Below, in pieces: positions 22,762 to 45,058 of a DNA stretch of 64,000 nucleotides; positions within the stretch are counted from its first letter, which is position 1, and each line of letters starts with the position of its first letter. The notes under the pieces were generated by a model, which saw only the letters and a list, made by a program, of their open reading frames with translations, was not told the DNA's origin and ran no database searches. Source of the stretch: Octopus bimaculoides (taxonomy: Eukaryota); NCBI RefSeq assembly GCF_001194135.2, contig NC_068981.1:158468007-158532006 (forward strand). The letters are read 5' to 3'. The translations under genes were made by a program, and so were the position numbers.

Positions 22762-22810
<49 letters not shown>

Positions 22811-23895: not shown

Positions 23896-23910
23896 ACCTA
23901 GCTCTAATTT

Positions 23911-24065: not shown

Positions 24066-24144
<79 letters not shown>

Positions 24145-25374: not shown

Positions 25375-25443
<69 letters not shown>

Positions 25444-25444
<1 letters not shown>

Positions 25445-26000
25445 GAGTGAGAGAGCAGTGCATGCCATCAAAGTGACACTGAGTAAAATATACGAAGCCC
25501 GTTATACCCATCATGACTACCCGTCTGATAAGGGTACACCAGGCACATGCATCACAACCATATGTGCATGACATGGTGATCTCATATCAAGATAAACAGC
25601 GCTTGACCTCGCAGGTGGGGCCCAGTTAGAATTTTCTTCAGGTCGAGTAGCCCATCCCACTCAAAAGGTCCCTGAATAAGGTTTGTTTAAGGATGTTGAG
25701 CAAAACACCCATGTTTCCAAAAGTGAATTATTCAAACCCCAAAGAATTCCTCTCAACACATGGCTATGATGCTCCCCCACTACTTCTGCTCATGATCAGA
25801 GATGCACATATCGTCAGCCACCAAGGGACATGCTCAACTGGTTAAGGTCAAACAACTGACAAGCAAATCTGAGGTACTGAGCAGAATATTTGCTGTAGCC
25901 CATCTTTTATACCAAGACAAAACAATGTACATGATAACACTTCCTATCAATTAAGATCAGAAGCCATGAGAGCCAGTGCCTGGTACGCTTCCGGGCATTT
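25444..26000. repeat. About 555-bp putative interspersed element between two (ATT)n arrays
   Basis: Sharp boundaries against (TAT)n on both sides, higher GC than the flanks, no coding signature. Confidence 0.5.
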
Positions 26001-26001
26001 A

Positions 26002-26044
<43 letters not shown>

Positions 26045-26311
26045 TGTTGTTGTTGTTGTTAAGAAAAAGAAAAAGAAGAGTGGGACTGAATAGCCACGAT
26101 TTAACACCATTTCAGTTCCTAACCGACTTATCTCTGGAACGAACAAATCCCTAGGCATTGTTAATGAGAGTTGTCAAAGATCTTACACTGACCACATTCA
26201 TAATTTGAGAGATTAAATTTTAAAATCATATAAAAATATTTTTTCGCAATGTCTGGTCTATCATTGTTATATTTTTGTGTAAATGTGTGTGTTGTTTTTT
26301 TTTAATTTTAG

Positions 26312-26442
26312 GAAAAACAGGAAGTAGCTGCTGCTAATGTGATGTTCATGATGACATATGTTGTAATGAAGAGAGAAGATTTCTTATTGATCAACAATAC
26401 CTTCAGCTGGTCTAACCGTATTACACCAATAATCTCCAAGAT
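26312..26442 (+). CDS. DNAH3: Dynein heavy chain exon 13
   Basis: aattttag|GAA...AAGAT|gtaagt; EKQEVAAANVMFMMTY...EDFLLINNTFSWSNRITPI; phase 0 to 2. Confidence 0.85.
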
Positions 26443-26473
26443 GTAAGTCACACTAGCATCCAACAGACACATA

Positions 26474-26544
<71 letters not shown>

Positions 26545-27299
26545 GCGCGGCACACACAAATCATATATATTCACGCGCGCGCACGCACATATATTATGCT
26601 TTTTACTCAAAACAAAAGAACACTTAATATAAATATAATGAGGATGTATGATATATTTTGATATATTTTAATGACAATAGTCATAAACCCGAGTTTTGTG
26701 TTAAGGTGGTGCCCTACACTCATCAGATAGGCACGTTATGGGTTTAAGTTGAAAACAGCCGAAAATGGTTGCTGCAGAAGTTCTGTGCACAAAAGCTTTC
26801 GAGAAAATAAAAAGTTTTTTTTTTTTTATTTCAGAAAAAAACCTCCCTTATTATTAAGAAATAATATTTCAGTGTGAAGTAACTCATGTTCAAAAGCTAA
26901 AGAGTAATTTCTTTTACCAGAGGAAATGGCATTTTAGCCGTCTAATTCAAAAGAGATAGAATATTATAAGTATAAAGTGAGGAAGCGATAGAGAGTGTGG
27001 GAGAGGGAGTGGAGTAAAAAAGATGGAAAAAAACAATAAAGAAGAGAAATATTAAATAGATGAAAGGATAAATGAATGAAAGGTTGAATGGGGGTTTGGT
27101 CGCGAGGAGCAACTGGGAGAAAGAGCACTGGAGCTGTACTAGTACTTTACAATGTAGTTCCAATCATTTAAAATAGTGTAAGCATCTCCGATTTGGCATT
27201 TAAGTAAATTCCAGGAATTCGTCACTTCTCCGCTCAACGCAATCCACATCTTCTGTTAATGTTAGAGTAAGAATTACATTTCTCGAACAGCTTCCATTT

Positions 27300-27620
27300 G
27301 ATGTATGTATGTGTGGCGACTGCACACTATAACATGTTCGTCCATCGGAGCAATGATGATCATCTAGTCATCTTCAAGGTAACTCTGTTTAAAGTGAAGA
27401 AGAGTAGCGCACGGTCAACACACTCCATTGTCAATAACCACTTTCAGTCCAGTGACAAAACCAGGTTAAGATTACTGAGGACGGAGAAGCATGCAATGAA
27501 TGACCAAGATATCTTACTTGCCTCATCTTGTTCTTTACACTCCATAATGCGTTGCTGAAGCTGTTTTCCCCTCCACTGAACTACTGAAGGTTTCTTACGC
27601 AGAGTCCGCCAAATCCAGTT
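27300..27620 (-). mobile_element. Possible decayed RTE-type LINE fragment
   Basis: Minus strand contains ...RQVRYLGH..., like the RTE R.R..GH motif; weak. Confidence 0.35.
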
Positions 27621-28036
27621 TTCACAAGAATAGGTAGGTAAGCCCTAATATCATAATTAACCTATAGCTGGGACCCTGACCACTGGGACAGAATAGACCT
27701 GGGAATAATAGTGGCTAAGTGTTGGTTCTACTCTCCTCAAAAAACCTTGACTCTCGAAACCGAGCCCCATAACCAGTTGAAGTTTAGTCATACCCAGTAC
27801 AAGTACATACATACACACATAGACATATACACGCATGCATGCGTGCATACATACATACATACATACATACATACATACATACATACATACATACAAACAT
27901 CAGTTTGCAATGGAATTGTATCATTGAGCGGATCACAGAAAGGTAATAAGATTTTTTTATACTAATAATAGACTTACAATACGGAAATATTCGAGAGATG
28001 GGGAGAGAGATAACTGTGAGTGAATGTGTGTGTGTG

Positions 28037-28082
<46 letters not shown>

Positions 28083-28110
28083 ATTAAAGTTTCGTGCTCC
28101 ACGTATATTA

Positions 28111-28788
28111 TTGGGTCATCGCATAAATAATGCGGTTTTTTCAATTGCATGAACTAAAAGTCGGAGGAAGACGAGATAAACAATCTGCATCAACTTATTA
28201 TAAAAGCGGGTAGTAATATTACCTTGTTCTTATCCTTAGAAGAGTGATTTTAACAGTTATTTTTTCAAAGCTATAATGGAAGTTACAAAAGAGCATATTC
28301 GACATATTTTGCTTTATTAGTTCAATAAAGGCAATGACGCAACGGAAAGCACGAGGAATATTAATGCAGTATATAGGGATCGGACAATAATCGTAAGCCA
28401 GTGTCAACGGTGGTTCCAGAAATTCCGAGCTGGAAACTCCAGCCTAGAAGACGAGCCTCGTCCTGGAAGATCAGTAGAGCTCGTTGAGGTCGTCCTGCAA
28501 ACCTCGATGGAACAAAATCCCATCGTAACTGTTGAGGAACTAGCAGAGAAGCTTGGGTTTGGTCGTTCAACCAGTCATTCAAGTCAGCGCTAGAAGAGAA
28601 ACGACTGTCTTTGGTTTCAAGACGAAAGATGTTCTTCCATCAAGATAACGCTTGGCCACATACGGCGAGGATGACATTCCAAAGTCTGGAGCAGTTTGAA
28701 TGAGAAACGATGCCCATTCCAGCGTATTCGCCAGAAATTGCCTCATTTGATTATTACTTATTCCGCAGATATATATATATATATATAA
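28111..28788 (+). mobile_element. Internally deleted mariner transposon
   Basis: TA|TTGGGTCATCGCATAAAT TIR; ATG 28276 MEVTKEHIRHILLY*F...QCQRWFQKFR.G..SLEDEPRPGR; deletion; then FHQDNAWPH and a YSP.(L)A..DYYLF-like motif. Confidence 0.9.
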
Positions 28789-29621
28789 TTTTACATGTAT
28801 AATATTATACATATTTTTACATAAGACTATTATATATTATATATTATTCAAGCAGAAGGACCCGGTTTCATTCGGGTTATAAACTCATAGCCTTAACACA
28901 GTACTCTTTGCTTGTAGTTTAATTTGACACTTTCCTTCTAGGCATGGTTAGGAAAATATGTTGTAAAGGAATTGTTCGTACTTCGTTGTGAAATGATTTT
29001 TTCCACGGGTTTTTTTTCGACTGCATTCAACATATCTGACCTCCAAATGCACCGCAAACCACTTTTTCTAGGAAAGAAAGGGGGAGGGTGGTGGGGACCT
29101 CGAAATTTTCCAGGCAGCTTGAAGTTTCCCACCAATGGAGTTTTGTTTCGTGGGTTTTTGTTTTTCTTTTCCAAGTTATTTCGTATACTTTCAACGAATG
29201 TAATATGGAAATCACACATAAACGGTTCCTTTCCCCCAGAAAAGGGAAGACTTGACTGCTATTTCTAGCACGCTCTGCTACCATGTAACAGCTATTTGCG
29301 ATAAAGGACCAGCCGATATTTCGTTGTGAAATAATTATTGACTTCTCCCCCCGCCCTTTCTTTTCGGTGGGTTTGGAGATCAGATACGTTGAATGTACTC
29401 GAAAATACCTGTGGAAAAATGTTATTTGACACCGAAAGTGAAAAACCTTTTTTAAAGAAGTTAATCTTATATAAACCAATATCATTTATTTTTAATAAAA
29501 AAGATAAAATTAAGACCCTATTATGTATCCGAGATCAAATTATTCATGCACCCCAAGTATGGAACCAATTCGCGCAGCTGTTTCCGCGTGAAAAGCGAAT
29601 ACATACACACACAGGTCTATT

Positions 29622-29774
29622 NNNNNNNNNNNNNNNNNNNNNNNNNNNNNNNNNNNNNNNNNNNNNNNNNNNNNNNNNNNNNNNNNNNNNNNNNNNNNNN
29701 NNNNNNNNNNNNNNNNNNNNNNNNNNNNNNNNNNNNNNNNNNNNNNNNNNNNNNNNNNNNNNNNNNNNNNNNNN
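29622..29774. other. Assembly gap (N-run)
   Basis: Other gaps at 4807-4816, 5899-5921, 19626-19635, 19843-19852, 21929-21980, 37168-37438; most are adjacent to microsatellites. Confidence 1.
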
Positions 29775-30661
29775 TATATATATCAACACAAAGGTTTGCA
29801 AATTTGATCTTGTTTAATAATTATTAGTGACTTTTTTTATTATTCCCTTATTAGCCTTTTATTTCTGTGCGGTAAATGAATGAAGTTCTATATCAATAAA
29901 GTAAATTTAAAGTAAGGCATCGTTCATTAAATATGTTAGACAAGTAATTTTACGGATGGAATAACAGTCACTGTGTTTTCTATTAAATTTACTGGCAGCT
30001 ATAAATATAGATACACACACACCTAAAACGATATGAAACCAGTGGTAAAGGATAGAATTCCACTAATGGTAACCAAGTGCCTGGTATTAGGACTGAATTG
30101 AGTGATGAGTTAAGCATGTCTTTTCTCCATGAGCGGGAAATATTTTTGCGACAGGTTCCACAGCTTCTGTCCACCAAATTTCATATAAATGGCTTTGACC
30201 AATTCGTGGCAATGGTAGAAAATACTCGTACAATGATCTCGAACAAGTTGTGCTGTGAACTTCTTAACCGCAGCCATATTTGCGCTGTTAATTATCTCAT
30301 TGGATCAGTTATATTCAGTACTTTATAGTTTAAAACAGTGATACACAACCTCTTATCCTGTAATGGCCCACAATTTTGTTTTATATCGACCATAGTCCAT
30401 CCGCTATCGACCAAATAAAACCGAAAATCAGTATTTTAACACAAATCTAACTCAAACTATAATTTTAAAATGCACTACTAGCCATTAAAAGCATGAAATT
30501 CAGTAAAAAGAAATGAATAGTTTGGTCGTGAAAAATTCGGGATCTCGCTTATTGTGTGTGACTCAACCTTATCAACAATATCTACAAATCAACCTATTCT
30601 CTAATGTTATTTATCAATGTGTCGGTCAGTATATGTTAGTCTCATACCTTTTGTACTCCTA

Positions 30662-30700
<39 letters not shown>

Positions 30701-31440
30701 ACACACACATACACACACACATACCCACACACAAATTCTTATACTGCTATCATAAAGAGTGTTAGCTGTATTTTACTAAATAAATGATAAGGCATTGTTG
30801 ACACTCATCCGTTTAGAATTACTTATGCATACTTGGAAGAGCCTTATACGAGATTGTGCCTCACCTTCACACATACACTCAAAAAAATTAATAGCCACTT
30901 GTTACAGCACACCTTTAATATTTTACCATCATACTCTTAACCACACCTGCTTGTCAAAGGGTTGATCTTTTTATTTCATGGAGATTAAGACAGTTGCTCA
31001 CGTCATAAATAATTCTACCTTTCTCTCTCTTTCTCTCCCTCTTTCTCTCTCTTCTACCTTTCTTTCTCCGATGTTGGGTACGTCTGTGTTTGTATTGTCT
31101 GCCCTCTGTAAATACCAACACAATATATAATATAAAGCTTCACTCTTGACAGTCTCACGAACAAAAGAAATCGATTAATTTCTTGTTGCTGCTGCTGTTG
31201 TTGTTGTAGTTTGGACTGTCTTATAGTGAAGAGTATTCAAGCCATGGCCATCTTGTCTTTTAGTTTTTCAAGCTTAGCATATCAAGGACAACGTTCGCTA
31301 TTTAATATAACCTTCCCTTTCTTTTCTCTAACAGTAGGCCTTTTAAGATTTGAGGAAGATTTGGCTGCTATTTTTTCTAGTGCAGCAATTCCATTGAAGT
31401 TCTCTGGATACTTTGTATGGAGTATTGCTGCTAATGTATA

Positions 31441-31662
31441 TGACGAGGTGCTGAAAAGTTCCTAACTTTAAAGGTCTCACGAAAGGCCTAGCTGGAGTTC
31501 CAACTTTCCAAGTTCTTTTACAGGGCTTAGAAAAACTGAAGGATCGCTGCAGTGTACGAATCTGAGAGGGGGATATGTTGAATAAAACCATAATCAACTG
31601 ATCCTCCTGTATTTTCTTTTACCCAAAGACAGGAACTTTTTAGTCACCACCTCTTACTCGTA
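31441..31662. mobile_element. Degenerate mariner-type MITE
   Basis: GAGGTGCTGAAAAGTTCCT at the left end versus AGGAACTTTTTAGTCACC...CTCGTA at the right end. Confidence 0.45.
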
Positions 31663-32265
31663 TATTGTCCAGGAGGGTTTGTTTCTTAATCGGCAAAGTG
31701 CCAGGTACAAAACTTAGCTGCTCCGATATGGGTGCAGAAATGGCTGTGTGGATAAGAAGTTTGATTTGAAATTGCGTGGTTTCGGGTTTGATCCCACCGC
31801 GTGGCACTTTAGGTAGTAATCTTCTTCCACAACCTTCGGTCGATCAAACTTGTGTGAAGGAAATTTGGTAGATAGAAACCATCTTGAAGCCGATCGGAAG
31901 AATTACTCCTCTTCTTGGGTACTAGACTCCATTCATTTCCCAGGTAAACAGCACCACCTGAGTCTTGAGTGCATTTAGCAGAACCTGTTCCGTTGCAAGC
32001 ATTCAGTCCAGATCACCAGAATGGGAGACTTCTCGAAAGTCCCCAATTAATAATATATATAATGTGTGTGTGTGTGTGAATTTGCAAAAATCTGATTGAT
32101 ACAGGCAATGAAATTTGTTCTTTAATAAGATATCAATGAATTTTCTCTTTTTTTACCTCAGTATTCTAAACTACAATTTATTTACACGAGAAATCATCAT
32201 TATCATTAGGAAATAATGAAAGAGATGCTAGCTTAATGTAAACTTTCATATTAAGACAAATAAAA

Positions 32266-32580
32266 TTAAGAACTTCCTAGCACTTTCGATATGATATCTT
32301 TGCAGCAAGGCAACATAAACTCTTCGCCGATATTGTGGGGCTTTTTTGCAACAGCTATTGCCATTGAAACTTCGAAGGATGCTTTCAAACTAGCTGTACT
32401 GTCCAGTAAAAACATTCCTGTGTGATCAAGTCTGGATTTCGTCAATCTGGCGGCTTCGCGCCAGAAGAAGTCGACATCTCTATTCAATTGGGATACTTCG
32501 TTTCGAAGTGCCTCTTTAACTTGCTGGGTAGACATCAAAATCTCGGAGTACAAAATGACACTCTGGCTTCTCGTCTCCAC
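32266..32580 (-). mobile_element. hAT (Charlie/Buster-type) transposase fragment
   Basis: DVDFFWREAARLTKSRLDHTG...LKASFEVSMAIAVAKKPHNIGEEFMLPCCKDI, matching the Buster/ZBED5 AS..VA..IAK.KKPH.IGE.LI.P motif. Confidence 0.85.
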
Positions 32581-33039
32581 TAGGCTTTATAAAACCGAAT
32601 TTCAAATACGAATTATCATATCTCATTTTTTTCTTTAGAGGCATTGTAAAAAAAGATAAAATTCAGCAAACCAATTTAATATAACTACAGTGAATATTTA
32701 TTTCGCATGTATCATATACTACGGATGTGCATATATGCCTTATTATGGCCAGCTTTTGAGCGTAATAATTAGCAACAAAGCTTACCTCTCATTATTAATT
32801 GTGAAAGAAAACTTATGTGAGCGTTGTTTTGTCTGTAGATAAACCTCCGTGAACAAAACAGCTCTGTCAGAACACATTGCCATGAAAAATGAAAATGCCT
32901 TATAAAGCCCAGCTACCATGCGGGATGAGAATGGATGTTTGGCAAAGGGCAAAGTCATGCAGGAACATGTACTGGTGAAAATAACGACGGCGAGAGGCAT
33001 GCAAATGTGTGGATTGCAATAGTGGAGTGGTAAATCATG

Positions 33040-33700
33040 TGAGCTTAGAATACCGACAACGCAAGCACCGAAGCGTATGTGTTGTTGTCGAAGAGTCGTT
33101 TTCCCCGCAAATCCACCAGTAGTAAATGTGCTGAAGAAAGTCTGCACCGATTATGGGCTGATGGACATCGGCGATGGTGAATGCCCATGTATATTTTTGT
33201 GAGCCGATGTTGAGAGAAAGGGTGCGACGACTGTATGCCTCGATTGTGGACCCGTTGGCGACTGTTAAAGGTTGGCTCCGCTTTCCGTGTCGAGGTCCCT
33301 TGCCGACGCTGGGATCACGCTGACTTCTGCTCCTGTGTCGATTAGGAACCTGCATCCGGAGCTGCGATCGCGGACATAGAGGAGCAATTGGTCATGTCTG
33401 CCGGCCACCAGGGCGTTCAAATGGCGGCCGGCCCTGGAGTTTCTCTGGATCACTGGTGAAGGGGTCCTGGTTGTTTGCACTTTGTCGCCTTTTTTTCGAA
33501 CTTTGCGTGGCAGAACTTTGCGTGGCAGAAGCACAGGTTTAACCCTAACCTGTCTCGGGGCCGACCCTATGGCGTTGACCATGACACCACTGGATAAAAA
33601 ATGTGTGTCAGTTGCCTTTGCTAATTGCCGCAGGTCCTTGATTTTGGTCTGAGTTATGAGGGCCTGGACCTGGGGTGGCAGCTTGTGGAAGAATAAATAA
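33040..33700 (-). mobile_element. Ty3/Gypsy LTR retrotransposon gag-protease fragment
   Basis: Gag-like LFFHKLPPQVQALI...DLRQLAKATD; aspartic protease FLIDTGAEVSVIP...VANGSTI...ADVHQPIIGADFL; frameshifted. Confidence 0.88.
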
Positions 33701-34276
33701 GATTTTTTGGATAACTCTCTTAAATTAACATAAACATTTATTTACACGAAAGAAAATTACCGGAGACATAACACGTTTTGTTTACAAATATTGACATGTG
33801 CTATTTTCAGGATATTGACGACAAAATGTACAGTCACGTACAAAATGACAGCTTCCAAATCCTGTTTCCTGACTGGGTGAAAATGATCAAACTTTAAACT
33901 TCTATAACTTTTTAAAACATTTCAGTTTGGGCAAGTGTATTATTGTGCCAAATTTTTAAATTCTCAGTAAACTTCAACTTTTGAAATGCTGGCAGCCAAA
34001 ACGATAAGATCCGACAATAGCAAAGTTATAAGAATAGAAAAATTCTAAGTTTTCTTTTTTATTCATATAGGTGATTAATTTTACCACGATATATGCATAC
34101 ATGCACACACACATACACGCACGCACGTACACATGCGCGTACACACACATATACTTACTGCATCAAAACTACCAGAATCTTTAGTGAAGACAGCTAATGA
34201 AGGCTAAATTTTCGTGTTTTTCCTTTTGTTCCATCTGTCGTGCATTTTTATCATTTGTGCTTTTCTTTCAGTGTGT

Positions 34277-34373
<97 letters not shown>

Positions 34374-34751
34374 ATCCTTAAAATGATATTTTGTTTATCC
34401 TTAGTGTTAATGCACTGATATTTAGTTGATTGCCTTCACTGTCTATACGTATTTAGAAGTGTTGCCAATGAGTTTAGCTCCAGATTATCCCTAATCCAGC
34501 TTGCCAATGGTCAAAGATATTCTAACCATTACCACCCAGTATTTTCAAACATAATTCATCTTTGACAACATTATCCAAAATTCCATCACTTTATTCTGAG
34601 TGAGATTTGTCTATTATTTCTAATAGGTCAAGCAATCGACTAAAGGTTCCCTCAGTGGCCAACATTAAGCTATTGGTTTTGTATGTTGTCTCTAAGTTAT
34701 AACCACTAATCACAGATAATTTGTATGTTACATCTTATTTCCCCATTGCAG

Positions 34752-34947
34752 TGAAAGTCAACTTCAAAAACAACATGATTTAGCAGTAGAAAAGCTGAAT
34801 GGTTGGCGTAAACGGATTCTAGATAATGTGAGTGGTTTATCTAAAAAGCTGAAAGAATTTGCAACTAAAGACAGAATGTCAGAAGCTCAACAGATTTTAT
34901 CAGAGATTCGTATCATTGAAAATCAATTGGAAGTTTTGAAAAAAGAG
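34752..34947 (+). CDS. DNAH3: Dynein heavy chain exon 14
   Basis: attgcag|T...GAG|gtagga; ESQLQKQHDLAVEKL...KEFATKDRMSEAQ...KKE; phase 2 to 0. Confidence 0.88.
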
Positions 34948-36141
34948 GTAGGAAGTTTTGAAATTCATGCATTTCATTTACAAATAACATTATTTCTAAT
35001 TTTGGCACAAGGCCAGCAATTCTGAGAGGAGCAATTTGTCAATTGCATTGATTCCAGTGCTTCACTGGTGCTTATTTAGTCAATCCAGAAAGGATGAAAG
35101 GCAAAGTCGACCTTGGTAGTATTTGAACTGCAAATATAAGAGCTAGAGGAAATGCTGCTATGTATTTTGTCCCATGTGGTAATGATCTGACACTTCACTA
35201 CCCTATTCACAAATAATATCAAGTGTTGTATTATAAGAGTGACAGACAGAAGGAGATAAGTTTCTGTGAATTGAATCCATGAACTGGTTTTGAATTGGGA
35301 TCATTTACATTTTCAGTTTACAAACATCACAGAAGCCTAAGATGTCATGACTGCATTTCTTTTCTTCACCTGCTCGTTTTCTAATGTTTTTTAGAGGGGA
35401 AACTATTGCACTCTCTCATCATCATAAACAGGTTGTGAGAGAAAGAAATGAAAGAAAGAATAACATAAACAAACTTCAAAATAATGTAATGAACAGATAT
35501 TCCCTTATGTAGATGTATGCATGTAGGTGAACCACTTGGCTCCATTAGGTTGTAAGATAACCACTAAATATTATGAATCCATTTAGTGTATATCTACTGA
35601 TTCAATTTGAACTCAATATTGAAAGCTAAGAAACTTCTTCATTTTACAGTGCTACCAATGTTTACTGTACTAAAATATACTACCTTCAAGTACAGACAAA
35701 CTGGTGAGCTGGGTCTTTGTAAAGTGAAGTATCTTCATCATGAACTCAGTGAACTCCAGTTATAGGATTTGAACCATTGCCTCTCCACCTTGTAGTCCAT
35801 CACACTATGCCTCAACCAGTTATGTACTGGTCGACTGTTCATGCTACAAACAGTCAGTCAATACTTTAGCCATCTTGTAATATCACTTATTTATATTCAT
35901 TTTATAAAAATATTGAGGGTTAGTCAATCTTGTTGGTACTTTTCACTCATGCTGCTTTCATAATCATAACTATTAGAACTGGTAATTTAAAATGAAATAA
36001 GGAAAAGGAGGGTTCACTTGCATCTTTTTTTTTTTTACTTTCTGCATTGCAATCATCAACATCATCATCATTTAATATCTGTCCTCCATACTGACATGGG
36101 CTGAGTAGTTCAACAGGAGCCAGAAGGCCGTACCAAACACT

Positions 36142-36328
36142 AGTGCTTTTTATGTGGTGCTGGCATGGATGTCTCTTATACAGTGCTGGCACGGGTGCTT
36201 TTTATGTGACACCAGCATGGGTGCTTTTACATGACACCAGCACAGGTGCTTTTTATGTGATACCAGCATGGATGCTTCATACATTGTGCTGGCATCGGTG
36301 CTTTTATGTGGTGCCAGCACAGGTGCTT
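36142..36328. repeat. Degenerate about 26-bp minisatellite inside a family D element
   Basis: Repeated GTGCTTTTTATGTG...C(T/C)(G/A)GCA(T/C)GG units. Confidence 0.75.
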
Positions 36329-37036
36329 AGGCCTAATCTATAACTTGATTTACCACCACCAACTAGTCATTCAATATCTTTAGCAGAGATCGCTCTGTTA
36401 CAAGTAACTGGATCAGATGTCTGGTTTGAAAATAACCCCTATTAGTTTCAAAAACTTTGAGTGTTTCTTTTCCTCCTCAAAATAAACTAACTAAAACAAA
36501 AGAAGCAATGATGGACAAGGGATTAGCATTTCAGCATTTTGGTTGAAAAATCATGAAGTTATAATCCATAACTAGGGCATTTTTCAGTAGAAAAATCATA
36601 GAAGATAACTTCATAAGTTCCTCCAAAGCAGAGTTGATAAAAAAAACAAAAACAAAAGGAATCTGTGTAATGATGAAATGAAAATTAACCAGAAATTGAC
36701 CAGTCAGTGCCGACATTGTATCTTCCTTTAGAAGTTATTGAATGAATGATTTGATTTTATTTCTTTTTATTATTACATTTACACACCTTTTATTGTACCT
36801 AAAAACAAGGTTAAAAGCACACATGTGTATGTGAATGAATCTTCCTGATGGTATATCATAACAATTATTGTTTATATATGAATGACTCATTTACAAAATA
36901 TCCTTCCTCCTACTAACATGGAAGGAAGATTTTTTATGACAATATGAAATTGTAACATTAACACTAACTTCTTAGTCATGATTAACATAAGTGAAACCGG
37001 CTGTCTACATAAATATATGTATAAATATAATTAAGG

Positions 37037-37167
37037 GATCAGCAAAATATTTGCTTCACCATATACCGAAGTTCAGAAAAATAGCAGCTAAAAAAGCTGA
37101 GAATCAGCTTTTTTAGCTGCTATTTTTCTGAACTTCGGTATATGGTGAAGCAAATATTTTGCTGATC
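37037..37167. repeat. Perfect inverted repeat, 64-bp arms, GAA loop, abutting an N-gap
   Basis: 37037-37100 is the exact reverse complement of 37104-37167. Confidence 0.95.
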
Positions 37168-37461
37168 NNNNNNNNNNNNNNNNNNNNNNNNNNNNNNNNN
37201 NNNNNNNNNNNNNNNNNNNNNNNNNNNNNNNNNNNNNNNNNNNNNNNNNNNNNNNNNNNNNNNNNNNNNNNNNNNNNNNNNNNNNNNNNNNNNNNNNNNN
37301 NNNNNNNNNNNNNNNNNNNNNNNNNNNNNNNNNNNNNNNNNNNNNNNNNNNNNNNNNNNNNNNNNNNNNNNNNNNNNNNNNNNNNNNNNNNNNNNNNNNN
37401 NNNNNNNNNNNNNNNNNNNNNNNNNNNNNNNNNNNNNNTATATATACATATATATTATACA

Positions 37462-37508
<47 letters not shown>

Positions 37509-37593
37509 GCACACACACATAAAATTTTTGTGTATTGTTCTTTTTATATTTTTCGCTATATATATTTTTATTGTACCAACTTCATACAATTAG

Positions 37594-37788
37594 AAACAGA
37601 AAATTAACGAAGAAGAGATGATGCTGGGATTGGAAGAAATCAGTGAGTTTGAACAGGTGCAATTTCTAGCAACAGCAGTTGAACCTTATGAAAGACTTTG
37701 GTCAAATGCTGTCAAACTACAAACACAGTATGAATGTTGGATGAATGGGCCACTGCTGAACGTCAATTCTGAAGAGGTGGACCAAGAG
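37594..37788 (+). CDS. DNAH3: Dynein heavy chain exon 15 (DHC_N2 region)
   Basis: caattag|AAA...GAG|gtaata; KINEEE...PYERLW...WMNGPL. Confidence 0.95.
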
Positions 37789-38316
37789 GTAATATTTTGT
37801 TTTCTATTATGGTTGACATCATGATGTCTTAATAAATTCACTATGAAGTGAGTTGATAACTTGGTTTCAGTTCTTAGCTGGAACACCTTTCTTGTTTCCA
37901 TTTTTAAACTCTTAGTGAAAGATTTAAGCATCACAACTTTATTTCTCCTTCCCAGATAAACCTCGGGTATTATTTCCCATTTTACTTTAACAGATGCAAG
38001 AATGCATACAACCCTCCACCTACCACACACACACAAACAACAACAACGGCCAAACCAATTTTAATGCCTCCCTATATTATCACTGCTAAGAATAGTTCTC
38101 AAACATCCCTCAAGTGACACCATAGGATTTAAAAATAAGGAATGATGCCTTCAATTGCAGGCATGGCTATGTTGCTATGAAGCTCATTTTGCAACACTGT
38201 AGTTTCAAGTTCAGTCCCACTGCACAGTACCTTAAGCAAGTGTCTTCTATGATAACCCAAGGCCAATCAATACCATGTGAGAGAATTTGGAAGACAGAAA
38301 GTGAAAGAAGCTCATA

Positions 38317-38356
<40 letters not shown>

Positions 38357-39347
38357 CTTCTGCTACCACAACTTGATGACCAGTGTTAGTTTGTTTAAGT
38401 AACTTGGTAGTGTGGCAAAAGTTACTTATCTAATGGCGACAATGGTATCCCTAATTTACCATCAAGAATATTTACCTTTCTTTAACATCCACCAATATTT
38501 CTTCATCATCATCATCGCTTTAATGTTCACTTTTCCATGTTTGGATGGGTCAAACAGAGTTTGCAGAGACAGATTTTCTATGGTCAGATGCTTTTCCTGT
38601 TGCCAACCTCCACTTATTTCCAAGCAAGGTGATATTTCCTTATGGCCAGACATGTTTTTACAGAATATTGGAAATAATTGACATTGCTTGTATGACAGTG
38701 ACACACATTTACAGTTATCACATGACATCAAGATAAGGAGACACAAATGTACACACACTGACTCTTACACACACACACATATACATACATATATACATAG
38801 AGAGAGATAGATGCACACACACACAAACACAGTGAATGTCTTTCAGTTTCCGTCGCACAAAGACATGACTACATCTATAAGACACACCTATGTCTATTGC
38901 CACGCCTGCACCTATACCCATGCCTGGTAATAAAGTCTTCCTGGAGATTTTCGATGGAATTCTTGACAGTTGGCCAAAGGGTCAACAGTTCAAATTTCGT
39001 CAATATTACCAAACTGTCTCAATAGACACTTACACACCAATTGTCTTTTGCACCTATTGACCTCTCTAAATATGCTTTATCTTTCTCAAAGCTCACTTTA
39101 CTGTCTCAAAAAGTAGAAGGCTATATAAAATAATATAGACTGGAAAAAAACTTAATGATAAGGGTAGAAAACCTTTGGTCATAGGTCTGCTCATTTAGAC
39201 TCAACCTGAGAATAAATAACTTTTATACTCTAAACCCATTTTATCATAATGTCTACAATTGTAGTACTTGTACCTTATTTACCACAAAAATGGTTATTGT
39301 CATTGTCAACTAACAAGGTTAAATTGTGTTATATACACACTATTATA

Positions 39348-39744
39348 GGCGCAGGAGTGGCTGTGCTTACCATCCACATGGTTCTGGGTTCAGTCCCACT
39401 GTGTGGCACCTTGTGCAAGTGTCTGCTATTATAGCCTCGGGCCGACCAAAGCCTTGTGAGTGGATTTGGTAGATGGAAACTGAAAGAAGACTGTCGTATA
39501 TATGTATATGTATATATATATGTATGTGTATGTATATGTTTGTGTGTCTGTGTTTGTCCCCCCCAACATTGCTTGACAACCGATGCTGGTGTGTTTACGT
39601 CCCCGTAACTTAGTGGTTCGGCAAAAGAGACCAATAGAATAAGTACTAGGCATCCAAAGAATAAGTCCTGGGGTCGATTTTCTCGACTAAAGGTAGTGCT
39701 CCAGCATGGCCACAGTCAAATGACTGAAACAAGTAAAAGAGTAA
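39348..39744 (+). mobile_element. SINE family B (tRNA-like head, internal TA/TG microsatellite)
   Basis: GGCGCAGGAGTGGCTGTG...GGGTTCAGTCCCACTG...GCCGACCAAAGCCTTGTGAGTGG...GAAACAAGTAAAAGA; related copies at 15179-15582, about 31720-31900 and about 38160-38420. Confidence 0.8.
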
Positions 39745-40340
39745 ATCACACCCTGCTATCTTAGAAAATAGAACAATTTGGATTGCAGTTCTGGACATGT
39801 AATCCTACAAATACTATAAATGCGATAAAGCAGGATGGTCATATTTGGTATACCTTTGATCTACTTGATCAACACTGACCTGAAACTATACAACAATAAC
39901 TTTCTACACTCATCTTGACCTTTACTAGTGTAACTTCAACTATGCCGCATCTACTAAGCTCAGTACAGAACATTATTTTATTGTTTTAATTATATTAACA
40001 CATTAACTGCCACATGTACTACTGGCAGTTCATCACAAACTTCCCAGCTGTTATATGCACCACCAGTGGTACATTTTTGCAATTTGAAAAAATAGTTTAT
40101 TCTGTATCTTTGATGTGGTTTCAAGGATACTTAATTGATATGAGTACTAAATGATAAAGTTTAATTACGAAATATTCTAAAAATGCAAAAAAAAAAAAAA
40201 ACATTTCCTTGTAATTATACAAAATGCAGTGTGACTGAAAATACGTGGCATCATCAGTAAGTTCCAGTAATAGACTGTGGCAGTTAACATGTTAACTAGA
40301 TTTAATTTTAAAACGTAAATTTCAAATATATCTCTTTCAG

Positions 40341-40529
40341 ATTCAGACATTATGGAGGATTGCTTACAAATTAACCCAAGTTTTTAATCACCCAGACAAG
40401 AAAGGACCATTTAAAGCTGCCAGGGCCATGAAAAACAGACTGGAGAAATTTAAAATAAATATACCACTCGTGAAAGCACTCTGTAACCCTGGTATAAAAA
40501 ATAGGCACTGGAAGATGATGAGTGAAAAG
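40341..40529 (+). CDS. DNAH3: Dynein heavy chain exon 16
   Basis: ctttcag|ATT...AAG|gtagct; LWRIAYKL...LCNPGIKNRHW. Confidence 0.95.
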
Positions 40530-42516
40530 GTAGCTCTTTATAAATATTATTCTGTCCCTTTAAGTTCTGAATTGAAATCTCTCTGTAGTCAATTTTGCCT
40601 TTTGGTCCTCAAGGTTGATAAAATAAAGTTCCCTTAAAGTAGTAAGGATGATTTAGTTTACTATACTCTTTCTCAAAAATGTGTAATCTTGCAACAACAT
40701 TAAAAACCATAATCATTCTTACAAGAACTAGTGTTGTAAGATGGCAGTAGCTTTAGAGTGCAGGGCAAAATGTCTAATGATAATTGTTCTGATTCTTCCC
40801 ACTCTGAGTTCAAAATCTACCAAGGTTAACTGCACCTCTAGCTCTTCAGTTATTGATAAAATAAAGAAACAGTCAAGTACTGTGGTCAATGTAAACACAT
40901 GTTACCCCTCCCTTCAATCTATTGGTTTAGTACCTGTGTTAGTAACAATAATTAGAATAGTTGATCAGCAGAATCCTTAAAGTATGGGACGAAATAACCT
41001 GCAACATTTACATTCTGAGTTCAAATTCCAGCTGAAGTCACCTTTTCCTTTCAGGTCTCCATTGTCTATAAAATAAAGTACCATTCAAGTACTGTAGCTG
41101 ATTTAATTATGTCTGTCCCTAATTTCAGTCCCTGTGTCTGTATTAGAAACTATTATTATTTAATGTGAAAACTGTTCTGATTTCCAATTGAAGTTAAACC
41201 ACTTCCCCTAACTTTTACTAATGAACAGCATACTTTGCCACACAGGCCTCATGGGAAACCAGGGTATTATATTATTTTTCAGTGAGTAACATGACTCTAC
41301 TCATGGTTAAGTAATATTGCTTTTGAGAGAAATACATATGTTTTTCACAACTCAAAAATAACATCTGCAAAAGAAATACAAATAGATTTCACTGTATTTG
41401 AGGAAATGGTATTGGAAGAATTGCTAAGATTGAGTGCTGGTTGGTGTAGAAAAGTAGAAGTGTTTAGAGAATACATTACTCAGATATCATCCACATAAAA
41501 AACTATAGTTATGTTAATGCTAACACATTTAATGGATGGAACATCAAAACAATAACTAGAAATAATCAAGCAATGAGAAAGAATCAATATTAATCAATGA
41601 ATGATATTATTTTAATTATTTTGGCATCTACAGGAAACAACTCTTGGCATATTTTGATCTTATGATGATCTCAACAATAAAACACATACTTCACCTTGTT
41701 GGTATAATTAAGATAAAATATTATTATTATTTTTTGACTAATATTTTTCCCTCAGCACATAATTTGTTTTTTTCTAGGGAACTTCTTAATGCTCCCTGCA
41801 TCAAATATGTTAGCTTTCACTTAACATGTTAATTAGGGAACTTTGTAATATCTGGTGATTGTTCTGTTGTCTACATTGATATCCTAATGTAATTATCCCT
41901 TTCTTATCAGTTGTTAATGAATTTTTTTATTATTTTTTTTTTTTTGTTGTTGAAATTTCATCTGTAGAATTTTGTTCATCCCCAGATCATCCTTGATTGA
42001 GCAGTTCTTTTATTAAATTTTTCCAGCCAGGAACTTCCAATATTCTTTTTTTAGACATTTTATCTAGGTCTACAGTATCTAATGTAATTTTTCATTTAAA
42101 AATGTCATAGTATACTTTGAAGATTTGATTGCAATTTTTAGCAAGTCAGTTAACCCAAAAGAATCTTCTTCATTGGCTTGTCGTGTTTTGTTGTTGCTGC
42201 TGTATTTTGATCCTCAGTATAGAACTTCAACTTGGAAGATTCTATATAACATTTCAAGCAACAATTGCCTGAACAAACGAATAAATTCAACAAGGAAACC
42301 TCTACAGAGTCACTGTAAAAGCTTGAAATAGCAGATGAATCTGCATTAAATCACACTCTATCTTTAGTTATACGAAAGAATTGTTGGATAATATATATTT
42401 CTAGTAAAAAAGATGGTGTGATTACGGGTAGAACACTCTGCGGTTGATTGGAACTAACCAGAGAAATAGACAACAAATACAACAAACAATGAATAATAAT
42501 TCATCTTTTTCTTTAG

Positions 42517-42645
42517 GTTGGCTTTGATATCACACCACAGGAAGATACACCTTTATCTGAGATCTTGAAACTGGACCTTGAAAGGTACTTAGATGAACTG
42601 TCAGCCATAAGCTCTCAAGCTAATAAAGAATTTGCTTTAGAAAAG
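42517..42645 (+). CDS. DNAH3: Dynein heavy chain exon 17
   Basis: ctttag|GTT...AAG|gtgagt; VGFDITP...SQANKEFALEK. Confidence 0.95.
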
Positions 42646-43399
42646 GTGAGTTCAGGGTTTAGTTTCAGATAATCATGTAATAAATAGTATTAATTGACAT
42701 GCTTGAATTTGTAGTGTTTTAGTGGTAGTCTGAATTTGTGTATAATAATTTCAAGAAGATGGTTAATTAAAAAGAAACATTGCATTTGCCAATAGCTAAT
42801 AGAAAGGTTCCTGTGCTTGTCTCATTTTGTTTATGAAGTTTATTCAACCAGTTTTATGTTAAAATTGGCCAGATCTGTCTCCTCACACCTATCCTACAAT
42901 GTCATTCTAAAAATAAGCAATCACACCATGAAAATCTCTTAGCTACAAGATAATGCATGATTGATACAAAATAATGTTAATAAATAAGCATCACATTTGA
43001 GAGAGTAATCTGAATGCTACAAGATTAAAACAAAACAAAGAAATTGAAGCCTCTATGCTCCTTTGGAGCTGACCCTTTTAGTACCAGAGCTAATATGCAA
43101 GTGTGAAAGAACCTATGGAGATCTATATGGGCTGAGAAAAATAATGAATACTTAATTTTACAAAATTCATATGTATACAAATTACTTTTAATTATCATTT
43201 TTATTGTTGGAATTTTACTTTTTTCATGAGTTTTTAAAATTTTCTGCAGTAGACTATTTCTTTTGGAATGTGGCAGCTGGTATCCCACACCTATTCTATA
43301 TAGATGTTCAACCTGCTTAAAACATTAGTCAAATTGCTTTCAAATTACATTCTACTGTCTTAAAAGGCCTAGACAACTCAGGACTATGGGAGAAGATAC

Positions 43400-43900
43400 T
43401 TGCTAAGGTACAACTCAGCCATACCTGTACCCATATGTTAGTTCTACCCTCATATGATATGGCTACAGCCATACTGCTATACTGCTCAGTCTTATATCCA
43501 AGAATTGTTAAATCTGAGAGCAATGGAATGTTATTTGACCATGTACTCATTAGCAGAGATGTTTTACTGAGCTACAAAGATCTCTGGGCTAAAGCAAAAC
43601 AGGTACCCATTTGCCAACAAACAGCAAAATGTGAGTGAGTATGAATAGAAAATATAAGGACATTTGGGAGACTAGAGGGATGTTTGGCAAGGAAGCCTTG
43701 GATTGGATTCCAGGGGAGAAATGGAAGACAGGATGCCAGAGGATTATGTGGCAGATATCAGCAGAAAAGGATGACAGGTATAACAGAGAATCAAATATAA
43801 AGAAAAGCATGAGGCAAAATATATCAGAAGAATCTATGGTGAGTCTATGTTCTGCAAGGAACACAAAGAGGCCCTGATGAAGACATGTTTTTATGTAATA
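43400..43900 (+). mobile_element. Decayed RTE-clade LINE 3' fragment
   Basis: KEALDWIPGEKWKTG resembles the RTE ALDW.P.GKR.RGRP motif; heavily mutated. Confidence 0.5.
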
Positions 43901-44045
43901 GATAAGTTGTTTCTCGAAATTCTGTTTTTGCTAATCCATAATGTAGTCATCATATGTCCACTAATTCTGATGATATCTTCAGTAAGTGTACCAATGATTA
44001 AATTATCTTAACACTCTTAAAAAAGTTCCTGTATGTGATTTTCAG

Positions 44046-44246
44046 GCATTATCTAAAATGAAGGATGACTGGGAAAACATGGCATTCAACTTCACACCTT
44101 ACAAGGACACAGAACTATTTATACTGTCAGCTTTTGATGACATCCAGGCCCTTCTTGATGATCATATTGTTAAAACTACAACAATGAAAGGTTCAGCATT
44201 TGTTGGACCTTTTGAAAAGGAGATTAAGGAATGGGGCTATAGTCTT
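44046..44246 (+). CDS. DNAH3: Dynein heavy chain exon 18
   Basis: tttcag|GCA...CTT|gtgagt; DDIQALLDDHIVKT.TMKGS.F. Confidence 0.95.
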
Positions 44247-44918
44247 GTGAGTATCTCACCATCTCTTTATCTTACTTTCATCAATGTTTCTTTTCTTTTT
44301 GTATACCTCTGTTCTTTATATTATTTCCTTCTTATTTGTGTTTCTCTTTTTCATACCATTCCACTTCTACAGTCTATGGGTCAGGACATTATTTCTGTTT
44401 TCAGGGGATATCATCAAGGAAACTGATGATAAAATTGTTATGCAAGCAATAAAACGTATTAAAGATACACTGGAAAGAGTTAAGCATGCTTATTTCATTA
44501 GAGTTTGAGAAAAAATCATGACTAAATGTGTTTAAGGAAAGCTGTTGGATAGAAGATGAAACAGTATCAATCTATAATAGCCTTCTACAAATGAGACAGT
44601 AAGAGGAATATGAATAAGTTGGTGCAGGTGATATTCAAGATTTATTGCATGCTGATAAGACCTTCATCTACAATGACCTTAAGGGGTTAACAGAACTGCA
44701 AATGTCTCCTTCAGATAACAAGAAGATGCTCCTTTATATTAGTTTTAATAGCAGAGTTCTTAAAGCCTTGGTTTAAAAGCCTTTTGGTTAGACTACTATG
44801 TTTTTAAGGAAGGCATGATCATCATACATTCTCTCTCCATGACTACACCTGGGTAAAAAATTAACATATTTCTACAATTCAAAATGTATAAAATCTAAAA
44901 CATCTTGATTTGTTTCAG

Positions 44919-45058
44919 AATCGTATGAAAGGTATCCTGGAATCTTGGCTGAAGGTTCAATCTGCCTGGTTGTACTTGGAACCAATATTTGGATCGGCAG
45001 ATATCAGAGAGCAAATTCCTGTACAGGGTAAAATGTTTGAAGAAGTTGACCAAAACTG
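44919..45058 (+). CDS. DNAH3: Dynein heavy chain exon 19
   Basis: tttcag|AAT...AACTG|gtaaat; WLKVQSAWLYLEPIF; phase 0 to 2. Confidence 0.95.

What the first reader, a model, noticed from the sequence alone, without database searches (positions are those of the whole stretch)
34460..35000. Sharp CpG-rich to CpG-depleted boundary inside the dynein gene at exon 14
Seen: by-eye counts give 11 CG in 8401-9000 and about 15 in 30300-31200, versus 1 in 45061-45660 and about 2 in 35000-35700. Family A SINEs keep CpGs 5' of the boundary (1757, 17595, 23359) but show CG>TG/CA decay 3' of it (51450: GGCAGTGAAATGGCAGAATTGTTAGCATGCAGGGCAAA). The switch lies within one contig (29775-37167), not at a gap. 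Known: mollusc methylation is mosaic gene-body methylation, starting downstream of promoters of broadly expressed genes. Inference: only the motor-encoding 3' half has been germline-methylated long term. This could reflect an internal promoter near 33-34.7 kb giving a tail-truncated dynein (exon 14 has an in-frame ATG at 34876, MSEAQQ...), or an overlapping antisense or neighbouring transcription unit ending here.
Basis: partly seen in the sequence, partly recalled or inferred. Interest (0 to 1): 0.7.

Follow-up and report, generated by a model that had tools for sequence, protein, structure and literature searches.

The report
CpG-depletion boundary inside a dynein gene
Inside one axonemal dynein gene the DNA switches, within about a kilobase, from normal CpG content to four-fold CpG depletion. 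This is the mutational footprint of long-term germline DNA methylation covering only the downstream part of the gene, a pattern already reported for thousands of octopus genes.

Summary
CpG o/e is 0.78 over 1-34,350 and 0.19 over 34,351-64,000. There is a single change point (support 34,281-34,531; LLR 180 against at most 33 in 2,000 block permutations). A step fits best, and the 10-90 % transition width is at most about 1.3 kb. The switch lies in intron 13 of a DNAH3-like inner-arm dynein gene, about 400 bp upstream of exon 14 (34,752-34,948), on a (GT)n microsatellite.

It is not a repeat-age, GC or assembly effect. Thirteen copies of one SINE family have equal non-CpG divergence on both sides (18.4 vs 17.5 %) but keep 63 % vs 11 % of ancestral CpGs. 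Only CpG falls, and TpG/CpA rise. Exons and unique intron DNA show the same contrast. Exons 13 and 14 are contiguous in an alignment to DNAH3.

The best reading is a stable boundary between a germline-unmethylated and a germline-methylated domain. This matches the "MP3" class described by bisulfite sequencing in Octopus bimaculoides (6,545 genes with an unmethylated 5' third and a methylated 3' part).

The CpG-dense block next to the boundary is a degenerate antisense retroelement fragment, and antisense ORFs give no Pfam hits. The feature is real but ordinary.

The parts
1..34350 (.). CpG-replete domain, inferred to be germline-unmethylated. It covers the dynein tail exons up to exon 13 and their introns.
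   Evidence: CpG o/e is 0.78 overall, 0.74 in exons and 0.70 in non-exon, non-SINE, non-TE DNA. SINE copies keep 58/92 ancestral CpGs, close to the roughly 67 % expected from their non-CpG divergence.
34351..64000 (.). CpG-depleted domain, inferred to be germline-methylated. It runs from exon 14 to at least the AAA2 exons and reaches the end of the window.
   Evidence: CpG o/e is 0.19 overall, 0.24 in exons and 0.17 in unique intron DNA. TpG/CpA o/e is 1.32 against 1.15 upstream. SINE copies keep 9/79 CpGs.
34281..34531 (.). Support interval of the change point, in intron 13.
   Evidence: Poisson change point with 2-lnL support. A step fits best. It is the only change point in the window.
34268..34374 (.). 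(GT)n microsatellite that coincides with the change point. It is paired with an imperfect (CA/CACG)n tract at 34,084-34,154.
   Evidence: Sequence read and repeat finder. There is roughly a 5 % chance that a 250-bp interval touches one of the 12 such loci.
30091..30249 (+). Dynein exon 13, the last exon in the CpG-replete domain. The donor is at 30,247 or 30,250.
   Evidence: Sequence read. It aligns to DNAH3 directly before exon 14.
34752..34948 (+). Dynein exon 14, the first exon in the CpG-depleted domain. It holds the in-frame ATG at 34,876 and retains 3 CpGs.
   Evidence: AG acceptor at 34,750-51 and GT donor at 34,949. Aligns to DNAH3 at about residues 735-800. ATG checked.
33048..33741 (-). 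Degenerate LTR-retroelement fragment (aspartyl protease, at least 2 frameshifts). It forms the GC-rich, CpG-dense block just upstream of the boundary.
   Evidence: The frameshift-bridged ORF passes the Pfam gathering cut-offs for gag-asp_proteas (28.8 vs 28.2 bits) and RVP (21.8 vs 20.7). CpG o/e is 0.90 over 32,200-33,800. No LTR pair was found.
14072..30250 (+). Dynein tail exons located upstream of the boundary: 14,072-14,203; 16,516-16,725; 16,933-17,166; 20,666-20,818; 24,622-24,789; 30,091-30,249.
   Evidence: Collinear single-stretch alignment to DNAH3 (9fqr_Xx residues 370-916, E=1.8e-37). Coordinates.
37603..63771 (+). Dynein exons downstream of exon 14: 37,603-37,788; 40,380-40,532; 42,517-42,645; 44,121-44,249; 44,900-45,059; 49,955-50,023; 51,697-51,930; 52,764-52,919; 53,765-53,908; 54,797-54,997; 55,422-55,541 (AAA1 P-loop); 57,050-57,175; 58,243-58,560; 60,396-60,539; 61,592-61,756; 62,255-62,401 (AAA2 P-loop); 63,667-63,771.
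   Evidence: tblastn of dynein fragments P0002, P0009 and P0001. PDB matches to DNAH3/7/12.
1745..25370 (+). Seven tRNA-type SINE copies in the CpG-replete domain: 1,745-1,965; 8,985-9,215; 13,195-13,400; 17,585-17,770; 21,981-22,150; 23,345-23,600; 25,135-25,370.
   Evidence: Self-BLAST and MAFFT alignment. CpG retention per copy is 40-92 %.
35040..61135 (.). Six copies of the same SINE family in the CpG-depleted domain: 35,040-35,210(-); 47,860-48,060(+); 51,445-51,680(+); 58,930-59,140(-); 59,120-59,370(+); 60,960-61,135(-).
   Evidence: CpG retention is 0-8 %, except 43 % in the least diverged copy at 59,120.

Best explanation
The window crosses a boundary between two long-lived germline epigenetic states inside a single DNAH3-like inner-arm axonemal dynein heavy-chain gene. 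Upstream, over at least 34 kb that include the tail exons up to exon 13, CpGs have not been methylated in the germline and decay no faster than other sites. Downstream, from intron 13/exon 14 through at least the AAA2 exons (at least 29.6 kb), CpGs in exons, introns and embedded SINEs alike have been methylated. They have been lost by 5mC deamination to TpG/CpA about 5 times faster. Shown here: the CpG-specific footprint, that it is independent of repeat age, GC content and sequence class, its sharpness, and that the gene is continuous. Inferred: that the cause is 5mC, and that the state is set in the germline and propagated by maintenance methylation. The locus fits the partially methylated gene class ('MP3': unmethylated first third, methylated 3' part) found by bisulfite sequencing in Octopus bimaculoides. 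My working mechanism, which is inference only, is as follows. Gene-body methylation is recruited by transcription-associated chromatin in germ cells; axonemal motor genes are testis-expressed in octopus. A large 5' regulatory or promoter-proximal chromatin domain excludes methylation, and the border is then copied faithfully. What fixes the border in intron 13 is not known.
For: A single change point at about 34,351, LLR about 180, far above the permutation maximum. A step is preferred over gradients. Only CpG changes (0.77 to 0.19), with reciprocal TpG/CpA gain, while GpC is unchanged. The same contrast appears in exons (0.74 vs 0.24 at equal GC of 0.39) and in unique non-coding DNA (0.70 vs 0.17). 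The SINE family has non-CpG divergence of 0.184 vs 0.175 (p=0.58) but CpG retention of 58/92 vs 9/79 (p=1.4e-12). The copy only about 700 bp past the boundary keeps 1 of 14 CpGs. Tail exons on both sides align collinearly to DNAH3 residues 370-916 in one stretch. Motor exons match DNAH3/7/12 best. Literature: the MP3 class of 6,545 octopus genes, with patterns identical across tissues (PMC9476566); testis expression of cilium-movement and motor genes in octopus; germline restoration of gene-body methylation guided by transcription-associated chromatin in a cnidarian (PMC13345969).
Against: There is no direct methylation measurement; CpG depletion is only a proxy and reports the past, not the present. 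One repeat copy inside the depleted domain (39,364-39,740) keeps as many CpGs as its upstream relative. The TE-rich 32.2-34.26 kb stretch may be young, which could exaggerate the sharpness and shift the true border by up to about 2 kb. The molluscan comparison locus (Elysia) shows no strong depletion in the motor region (o/e 0.4-0.8), so the pattern is not obviously conserved.
Confidence: 0.85

Rival explanations
1. An internal promoter in intron 13 (about 33-34.7 kb) is used in germ cells or broadly. Only the DNA downstream of it is transcribed where methylation is set, and the product would be a tail-truncated dynein starting at the ATG at 34,876.
For: Methylated domains follow germline transcription units in other systems (PMC13345969; mouse oocytes, PMC6102241). 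The boundary is sharp. An in-frame ATG exists in exon 14. The TA skew of non-exonic DNA is nominally positive only downstream: 0.022 [0.005, 0.041] vs 0.007 [-0.022, 0.033].
Against: No transcript data exist. The CpG-dense block at 33.0-33.75 kb is a frameshifted retroelement protease fragment on the opposite strand, not a unique CpG island. No LTR is detectable, and the element's sense promoter would point away from exon 14. The skew confidence intervals overlap. A protein lacking about 735 tail residues would lack most of the tail, the region that holds a dynein heavy chain in the axoneme (general knowledge of dyneins). The same 5'-unmethylated pattern occurs in 6,545 octopus genes, so a special promoter is not required.
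Confidence: 0.12
2. The methylated domain belongs to another transcription unit that overlaps the 3' part of the dynein gene and ends near 34.4 kb. This could be an antisense or non-coding RNA, a nested gene, or read-through from a downstream neighbour.
For: The MP3 description includes high methylation 'around the TTS', which is compatible with spread from downstream. The window ends inside the gene, so the neighbours are unseen.
Against: Antisense ORFs of at least 45 aa across 34.3-64 kb give no Pfam match. No unmethylated, promoter-like CpG-rich gap occurs in the depleted half; the highest 500-bp o/e is 0.72. Non-coding or short-exon genes cannot be excluded.
Confidence: 0.1
3. The contrast is compositional and not epigenetic: younger, CpG-rich repeats upstream and older ones downstream, or a GC gradient.
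For: The recognisable coding TE fragments all lie upstream and are CpG-rich, with o/e 0.77-1.01: LINE at 7.4-8.4 and 17.9-19.9 kb, mariner at 28.2-28.75 kb, retroelement at 32.2-33.8 kb. GC is slightly higher upstream (0.371 vs 0.341).
Against: After masking exons, SINEs and TE blocks the contrast persists (0.70 vs 0.17). Exons at identical GC differ 3-fold. SINE copies of equal non-CpG divergence differ 5.5-fold in CpG retention. GpC o/e is unchanged. Gradients are rejected.
Confidence: 0.02
4. Assembly artefact: contig 29,775-37,167 is a chimeric join at the (GT)n microsatellite between unrelated loci or paralogues.
For: The change point sits exactly on a roughly 105-bp microsatellite. A perfect 64-nt palindrome abuts the gap at 37,168, which shows that contig ends in this assembly are not flawless.
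Against: Exons 13 and 14 are consecutive, in phase and on the same strand, and align to DNAH3 without missing or duplicated residues. At worst some intron sequence is missing, and the boundary would still lie in intron 13. The two domains extend more than 29 kb on each side across several contigs.
Confidence: 0.03

Closest known systems
'Methylation pattern 3' genes of Octopus bimaculoides (Macchi, Edsinger & Sadler 2022, BMC Biol 20:202; PMC9476566)
   Same: The gene body is unmethylated in its first part and methylated toward the 3' end. The pattern is fixed across tissues, so it is presumably inherited. Embedded repeats follow the state of the host gene body.
   Different: That class was defined by bisulfite data averaged in 30 bins per transcript. 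Here there is only the evolutionary CpG footprint, though at near-nucleotide resolution, and it shows a step rather than a ramp. Whether this gene is in their MP3 list could not be checked, and the host species is unconfirmed.
Mosaic methylated and unmethylated domains of invertebrate genomes, with bimodal CpG o/e (for example Ciona, oyster, Nautilus; PMC12532940)
   Same: Long CpG-poor methylated domains alternate with CpG-rich unmethylated ones, and methylation is targeted to transcription units.
   Different: The unmethylated 5' part described in Nautilus is the promoter plus the first exon.
Transcription-defined methylated domains of mouse oocytes, including LTR-initiated transcription units (Brind'Amour et al. 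2018, PMC6102241)
   Same: Sharp domain borders can lie inside annotated genes. The mechanistic logic, methylation following germline transcription and H3K36me3, would explain a step at an internal start site. A retroelement fragment lies next to the border.
   Different: No LTR is detectable, and the element is antisense to the methylated side. There is no transcript evidence. This is a resemblance in how it might work, not membership.
DNAH3/DNAH7/DNAH12 single-headed inner-arm dynein heavy chains (PDB 8j07, 9fqr)
   Same: The motor exons match DNAH3 best (E about 1e-237). The tail exons are collinear with DNAH3 residues 370-916.
   Different: Orthology within the DNAH3/7/12 group was not resolved by phylogeny. 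The N-terminal roughly 370 residues were not located.

Membership tests
Partial gene-body methylation, 5'-unmethylated / 3'-methylated (octopus 'MP3' type) | The 5' part of the transcription unit lacks CpG methylation. | tested here: met
   By proxy only. CpG o/e is 0.78. SINE CpG retention of 63 % is close to the roughly 67 % neutral expectation from non-CpG divergence.
Partial gene-body methylation, 5'-unmethylated / 3'-methylated (octopus 'MP3' type) | The 3' part of the same transcription unit is methylated. | tested here: met
   By proxy only. CpG o/e is 0.19 in exons, introns and SINEs, with TpG/CpA excess. Both parts belong to one gene. [quoted passage not shown]
Partial gene-body methylation, 5'-unmethylated / 3'-methylated (octopus 'MP3' type) | Direct 5mC measurement (WGBS, RRBS or nanopore) shows the pattern, and it is the same across tissues. 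| not testable with these tools
   No methylome data are available. The Macchi supplements held as text contain no dynein names.
Partial gene-body methylation, 5'-unmethylated / 3'-methylated (octopus 'MP3' type) | The host is an octopus or other cephalopod with mosaic methylation. | tested here: inconclusive
   There are no same-species or close proteins in the database. The best named hit is the gastropod Elysia at 77 %. The SINE core was not found in papers.
Axonemal inner-arm dynein heavy chain, DNAH3/7/12 group | AAA1 and AAA2 P-loops and linker, with best similarity to DNAH3/7/12 rather than to outer-arm, I1 or cytoplasmic dyneins. | tested here: met
   DNAH3 scores 789-792 bits, DNAH7 723-733 and DNAH12 716-721, against 639 or less for DNAH1 and 501 or less for DNAH2/5/9/10/17 and cytoplasmic dynein. 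[10 protein letters not shown] is at 55.4 kb.
Axonemal inner-arm dynein heavy chain, DNAH3/7/12 group | A collinear tail region. | tested here: met
   A single alignment stretch to 9fqr_Xx residues 370-916, E=1.8e-37. Residues 1-370 were not located.
Internal (alternative) promoter or CpG-island-like TSS at the boundary | A unique, non-repeat CpG-rich segment at the 5' edge of the methylated domain. | tested here: not met
   The CpG-dense block at 33.0-33.75 kb is a frameshifted antisense retroelement protease fragment. The remaining 33.8-34.35 kb is microsatellite-rich.
Internal (alternative) promoter or CpG-island-like TSS at the boundary | Transcript 5' ends mapped in intron 13. | not testable with these tools
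   No RNA data are available.
LTR-initiated transcription unit shaping a germline methylated domain | An LTR at the domain edge, oriented toward the methylated side. | tested here: not met
   There are no direct repeats of LTR type in 29,775-37,167. The element's coding strand points away from the methylated side.

The most novel reading that the evidence does not exclude
Intron 13 harbours a germline-active internal start site, or a dedicated boundary element at the (CA)n/(GT)n pair. It has held the methylation border at the same place for the whole lifetime of the SINE family (about 18 % neutral divergence). A motor-plus-linker dynein transcript lacking the first roughly 735 tail residues would then be made in germ cells.
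Probability: 0.1. Interest if true: 0.55.

Novelty: new member of a known kind. Interest (0 to 1): 0.3.

Why it matters
The finding shows that sequence alone can locate a germline methylation border to within a few hundred bases. Using interspersed repeats as internal clocks, it also shows that the border has stayed put over a long evolutionary time. That makes this locus a clean test case for what positions such borders in mosaic-methylated invertebrate genomes: an internal start site, 5' chromatin exclusion, or sequence elements such as microsatellites. It does not reveal a new kind of biology, because genes with an unmethylated 5' part and a methylated 3' part are already documented in octopus by the thousand.

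Tried and rejected
1. Same-species or cephalopod orthologues for a comparative boundary test. The tail-exon query gave no hits. The motor query returned only fragments shorter than 950 aa from other phyla, at most 77 % identical. The Elysia locus reached only the motor region.
2. Locating the dynein N-terminus and canonical 5' end in 1-14 kb by phmmer against PDB dyneins. Nothing was found.
3. Identifying the host taxon from LINE ORFs (about 30 % identity, unnamed hits) and from a literature search for the SINE core. Both failed.
4. Looking up the gene's methylation class in the supplements of Macchi et al. They hold no dynein names.
5. Pfam on unbridged ORFs next to the boundary gave no hits. 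Only the frameshift-bridged protease passed. The hAT-like impression of ORF 32,269-32,586 was not confirmed.
6. Transcription-associated strand skews as a proxy for germline transcription. The confidence intervals overlap, so the result is inconclusive.
7. Explanations rejected: repeat age or GC gradient, a misjoin between unrelated loci, and an LTR-driven unit.

Full report
**1. Observation**

The CpG counts in the four quoted intervals are 11, 15, 1 and 2. The ATG at 34,876 starts MSEAQQ in the exon frame, and the quoted decayed SINE sequence is at 51,450.

In 2-kb bins, CpG observed/expected (o/e) is 0.57-0.99 from 1 to 34 kb and 0.07-0.35 from 34 to 64 kb. GC content is similar on the two sides and GpC o/e is about 1 throughout.

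- A Poisson change-point model, with expectations taken from local C and G frequencies, puts the switch at 34,351. The 2-lnL support interval is 34,281-34,531, the LLR is 182, and o/e is 0.78 on the left and 0.19 on the right.
- In 2,000 permutations of 250-bp blocks the largest LLR was 33, against 180 observed.
- Binary segmentation finds no second change point anywhere in the window.
- A logistic transition fits best as a step. Scales up to 300 bp lie within 2 lnL, and scales of 500 bp or more cost at least 3.5 lnL, so the 10-90 % width is at most about 1.3 kb.
- The switch lies inside the contig 29,775-37,167; the nearest N runs are 29,622-29,774 and 37,168-37,438.

**2. What the gene is, and whether it is continuous**

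Plus-strand open frames carry dynein heavy-chain exons on both sides of the switch.

- The motor exons match human and mammalian DNAH3 best (789-792 bits). DNAH7 and DNAH12 follow, with clearly lower scores for DNAH1, I1, outer-arm and cytoplasmic dyneins. The gene is therefore a single-headed inner-arm axonemal dynein.
- Tail exons taken from 14.0 kb to 40.5 kb align in one collinear stretch to DNAH3 residues 370-916 (E=1.8e-37).
- Exon 13 (30,091-30,246/9) and exon 14 (34,752-34,948) are adjacent in that alignment, with no missing or repeated residues, and they are in phase.
- tblastn with dynein fragments maps fourteen further exons between 44.1 and 63.8 kb, including the AAA1 P-loop exon at 55,422-55,541 and the AAA2 P-loop exon at 62,255-62,401. 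Three more, at 37.6, 40.4 and 42.5 kb, come from the open frames; the first two were in the tail alignment, and the 42.5-kb exon is placed from its open frame alone.

The switch is therefore in intron 13, about 400 bp upstream of exon 14, at roughly DNAH3 residue 735. That position is inside the tail, ahead of the linker and motor.

**3. Is it methylation decay or something else?**

- *Dinucleotides.* Of the 16 dinucleotides only CpG changes materially (0.77 to 0.19). TpG and CpA rise reciprocally (1.15 to 1.32-1.33). This is the 5mC deamination signature.
- *Sequence classes.* Exons differ 0.74 vs 0.24 at identical GC (0.39). DNA left after masking exons, SINEs and coding TE fragments differs 0.70 vs 0.17. 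Within the boundary contig, 29,775-32,200 has 0.56, 33,800-34,350 has 0.82 and 34,351-37,167 has 0.17.
- *Repeat age.* One tRNA-type SINE family has seven copies upstream and six downstream. I defined 14 ancestral CpG sites from the alignment. Upstream copies retain 58/92 (63 %) and downstream copies 9/79 (11 %; Fisher p=1.4e-12). Divergence at non-CpG sites is the same, 18.4 % vs 17.5 % (p=0.58).
- *Decay rates (inference).* With 18 % per-site divergence, about 67 % of CpG dinucleotides should survive if CpGs decay like other sites. The upstream domain matches that. The downstream domain has lost CpGs about five times faster.
- *Position of the nearest copy.* The copy only about 700 bp past the change point (35,040-35,210) keeps 1 of 14 CpGs.

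The border has therefore been in about the same place for the whole lifetime of these SINEs.

An exception is a copy of a second repeat family at 39,364-39,740, which keeps as many CpGs (9) as its upstream relative. It may be a younger insertion or a local hypomethylated patch. I could not tell which.

**4. The surroundings of the border**

- The change point coincides with a roughly 105-bp (GT)n tract (34,268-34,374). An imperfect (CA/CACG)n tract lies 110 bp upstream. With 12 such microsatellites in the window, a 250-bp interval touches one by chance about 5 % of the time. This is suggestive but not significant.
- The GC-rich, CpG-dense block at 33.0-33.75 kb might have looked like a CpG-island promoter. 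It is a minus-strand retroelement fragment. Once two frameshifts are bridged, the ORF passes the Pfam gathering thresholds for gag-asp_proteas and RVP. No LTR-type direct repeats are present in the contig.
- Because 32.2-34.26 kb is TE-derived and may be relatively young, its CpG richness is weak evidence about methylation state. A conservative placement of the border is 32.2-34.4 kb.
- Downstream there is no CpG-island-like gap; the highest o/e in any 500-bp window is 0.72.
- Antisense ORFs of at least 45 aa across 34.3-64 kb have no Pfam match.
- Transcription-associated strand skews in non-exonic DNA do not separate the two sides.

**5. Explanation**

The best-supported reading is a stable border between a germline-unmethylated domain and a germline-methylated domain within one gene.

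- *Shown here:* the footprint, its specificity to CpG, its independence from repeat age and composition, its sharpness, and the continuity of the gene.
- *Inferred:* that the agent is 5mC and that the state is inherited through the germline.

Three papers bear on this.

- Whole-genome bisulfite data in Octopus bimaculoides define four gene classes. [quoted passage not shown] The same patterns appear in two brain regions and in hatchlings (PMC9476566).
- The same paper reports that cilium-movement and motor genes are testis-expressed. That gives a plausible route to germline, transcription-coupled methylation of an otherwise tissue-specific gene.
- In the cnidarian Nematostella, gene-body methylation is restored specifically in the germline and follows transcription-associated chromatin (PMC13345969).

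What fixes the border at intron 13 is unknown. Composition or repeat age (about 0.02) and a misjoin between unrelated loci (about 0.03) are effectively excluded.

**6. Comparison with what is known**

- The locus behaves like an MP3-type gene, but membership is shown only by proxy. No direct methylation data exist here, and the host taxon could not be confirmed.
- It differs from the usual promoter-plus-first-exon hypomethylation, as described in Nautilus (PMC12532940).
- It resembles the transcription-defined domains of mouse oocytes (PMC6102241) in how it might work. The defining feature of an LTR-initiated unit, an LTR pointing into the methylated side, was tested and not met.
- A comparative test in another mollusc could not reach the tail. 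The Elysia motor region has CpG o/e of 0.4-0.8, so it gives no evidence for conservation.

**7. Verdict**

This is a real, statistically overwhelming and unusually sharp feature. Its core interpretation, long-term germline methylation of only the downstream part of the gene, is well supported. It is an instance of an already described class rather than a new phenomenon, and the more exciting reading, a tail-less dynein from an internal promoter, gains no support from the sequence. Interest is 0.3 and the novelty class is "new member of a known kind".

Noticed in passing
window 37,037-37,167: A perfect 64-nt inverted repeat (arms 37,037-37,100 and 37,104-37,167, 3-nt spacer) ends exactly at the N gap that starts at 37,168. 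It looks like a fold-back artefact at a contig end.
   Followed up: no
window 39,364-39,740 (compare 15,209-15,582 and 38,180-38,400): A copy of a second repeat family inside the CpG-depleted domain keeps 9 CpGs, as many as its upstream relative (CG-to-TG/CA polarity 5 vs 4). The neighbouring partial copy at 38.2 kb has none. It is either a younger insertion or a local hypomethylated patch, and it accounts for the o/e bump at 38.75-39.75 kb.
   Followed up: partly
window 34,084-34,154 and 34,268-34,374: An imperfect (CA/CACG)n tract and a (GT)n tract form an inverted pair about 110 bp apart, exactly at the CpG change point. The chance of a coincidence with any of the 12 GT/CA microsatellites is about 5 %.
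   Followed up: partly
window 7,635-8,090(-), 18,138-19,604(+), 28,321-28,590(+), 33,048-33,741(-): The TE fragments with Pfam-confirmed coding domains all lie in the CpG-replete half: LINE zf-RVT (weak hit), LINE endonuclease/RT, Mos1-type mariner HTH_48, and a retroelement protease. Plus-strand ORFs of the depleted half were not scanned with Pfam. An ORF at 43,635-43,874 may be a TE remnant whose Arg codons have decayed to Cys/Trp/Gln, but this was not verified.
   Followed up: partly
window 48,414-48,752: A tandem minisatellite with a period of about 85 bp lies in a dynein intron. It is visible as repeated ORF text (FYLLHVPIWGLTHTLRNYY...) and as self-BLAST hits.
   Followed up: no
window 32,269-32,586 (-): A 106-aa ORF (…KPHNIGEEFMLPCCKDIIS…) reminded me of hAT or GTF2IRD2-like transposases. 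It has no Pfam match at E<=1, so its identity is unconfirmed.
   Followed up: partly
L001 (Elysia crispata JAWDGP010002817.1, 490,235-558,096): The DNAH3-like gene of this gastropod is annotated as at least three separate gene models (272 aa, 445 aa, 1,836 aa). One of them also hits a DDE_Tnp_1_7 transposase domain, which suggests a fragmented or TE-contaminated model. CpG o/e there is 0.4-0.8.
   Followed up: no
Homologous-protein results: Every dynein hit returned was shorter than 950 aa, although full-length DNAH3 homologues (about 4,100 aa) should have scored at the top. The searchable collection seems to lack very long proteins, and this limited the comparative work.
   Followed up: no
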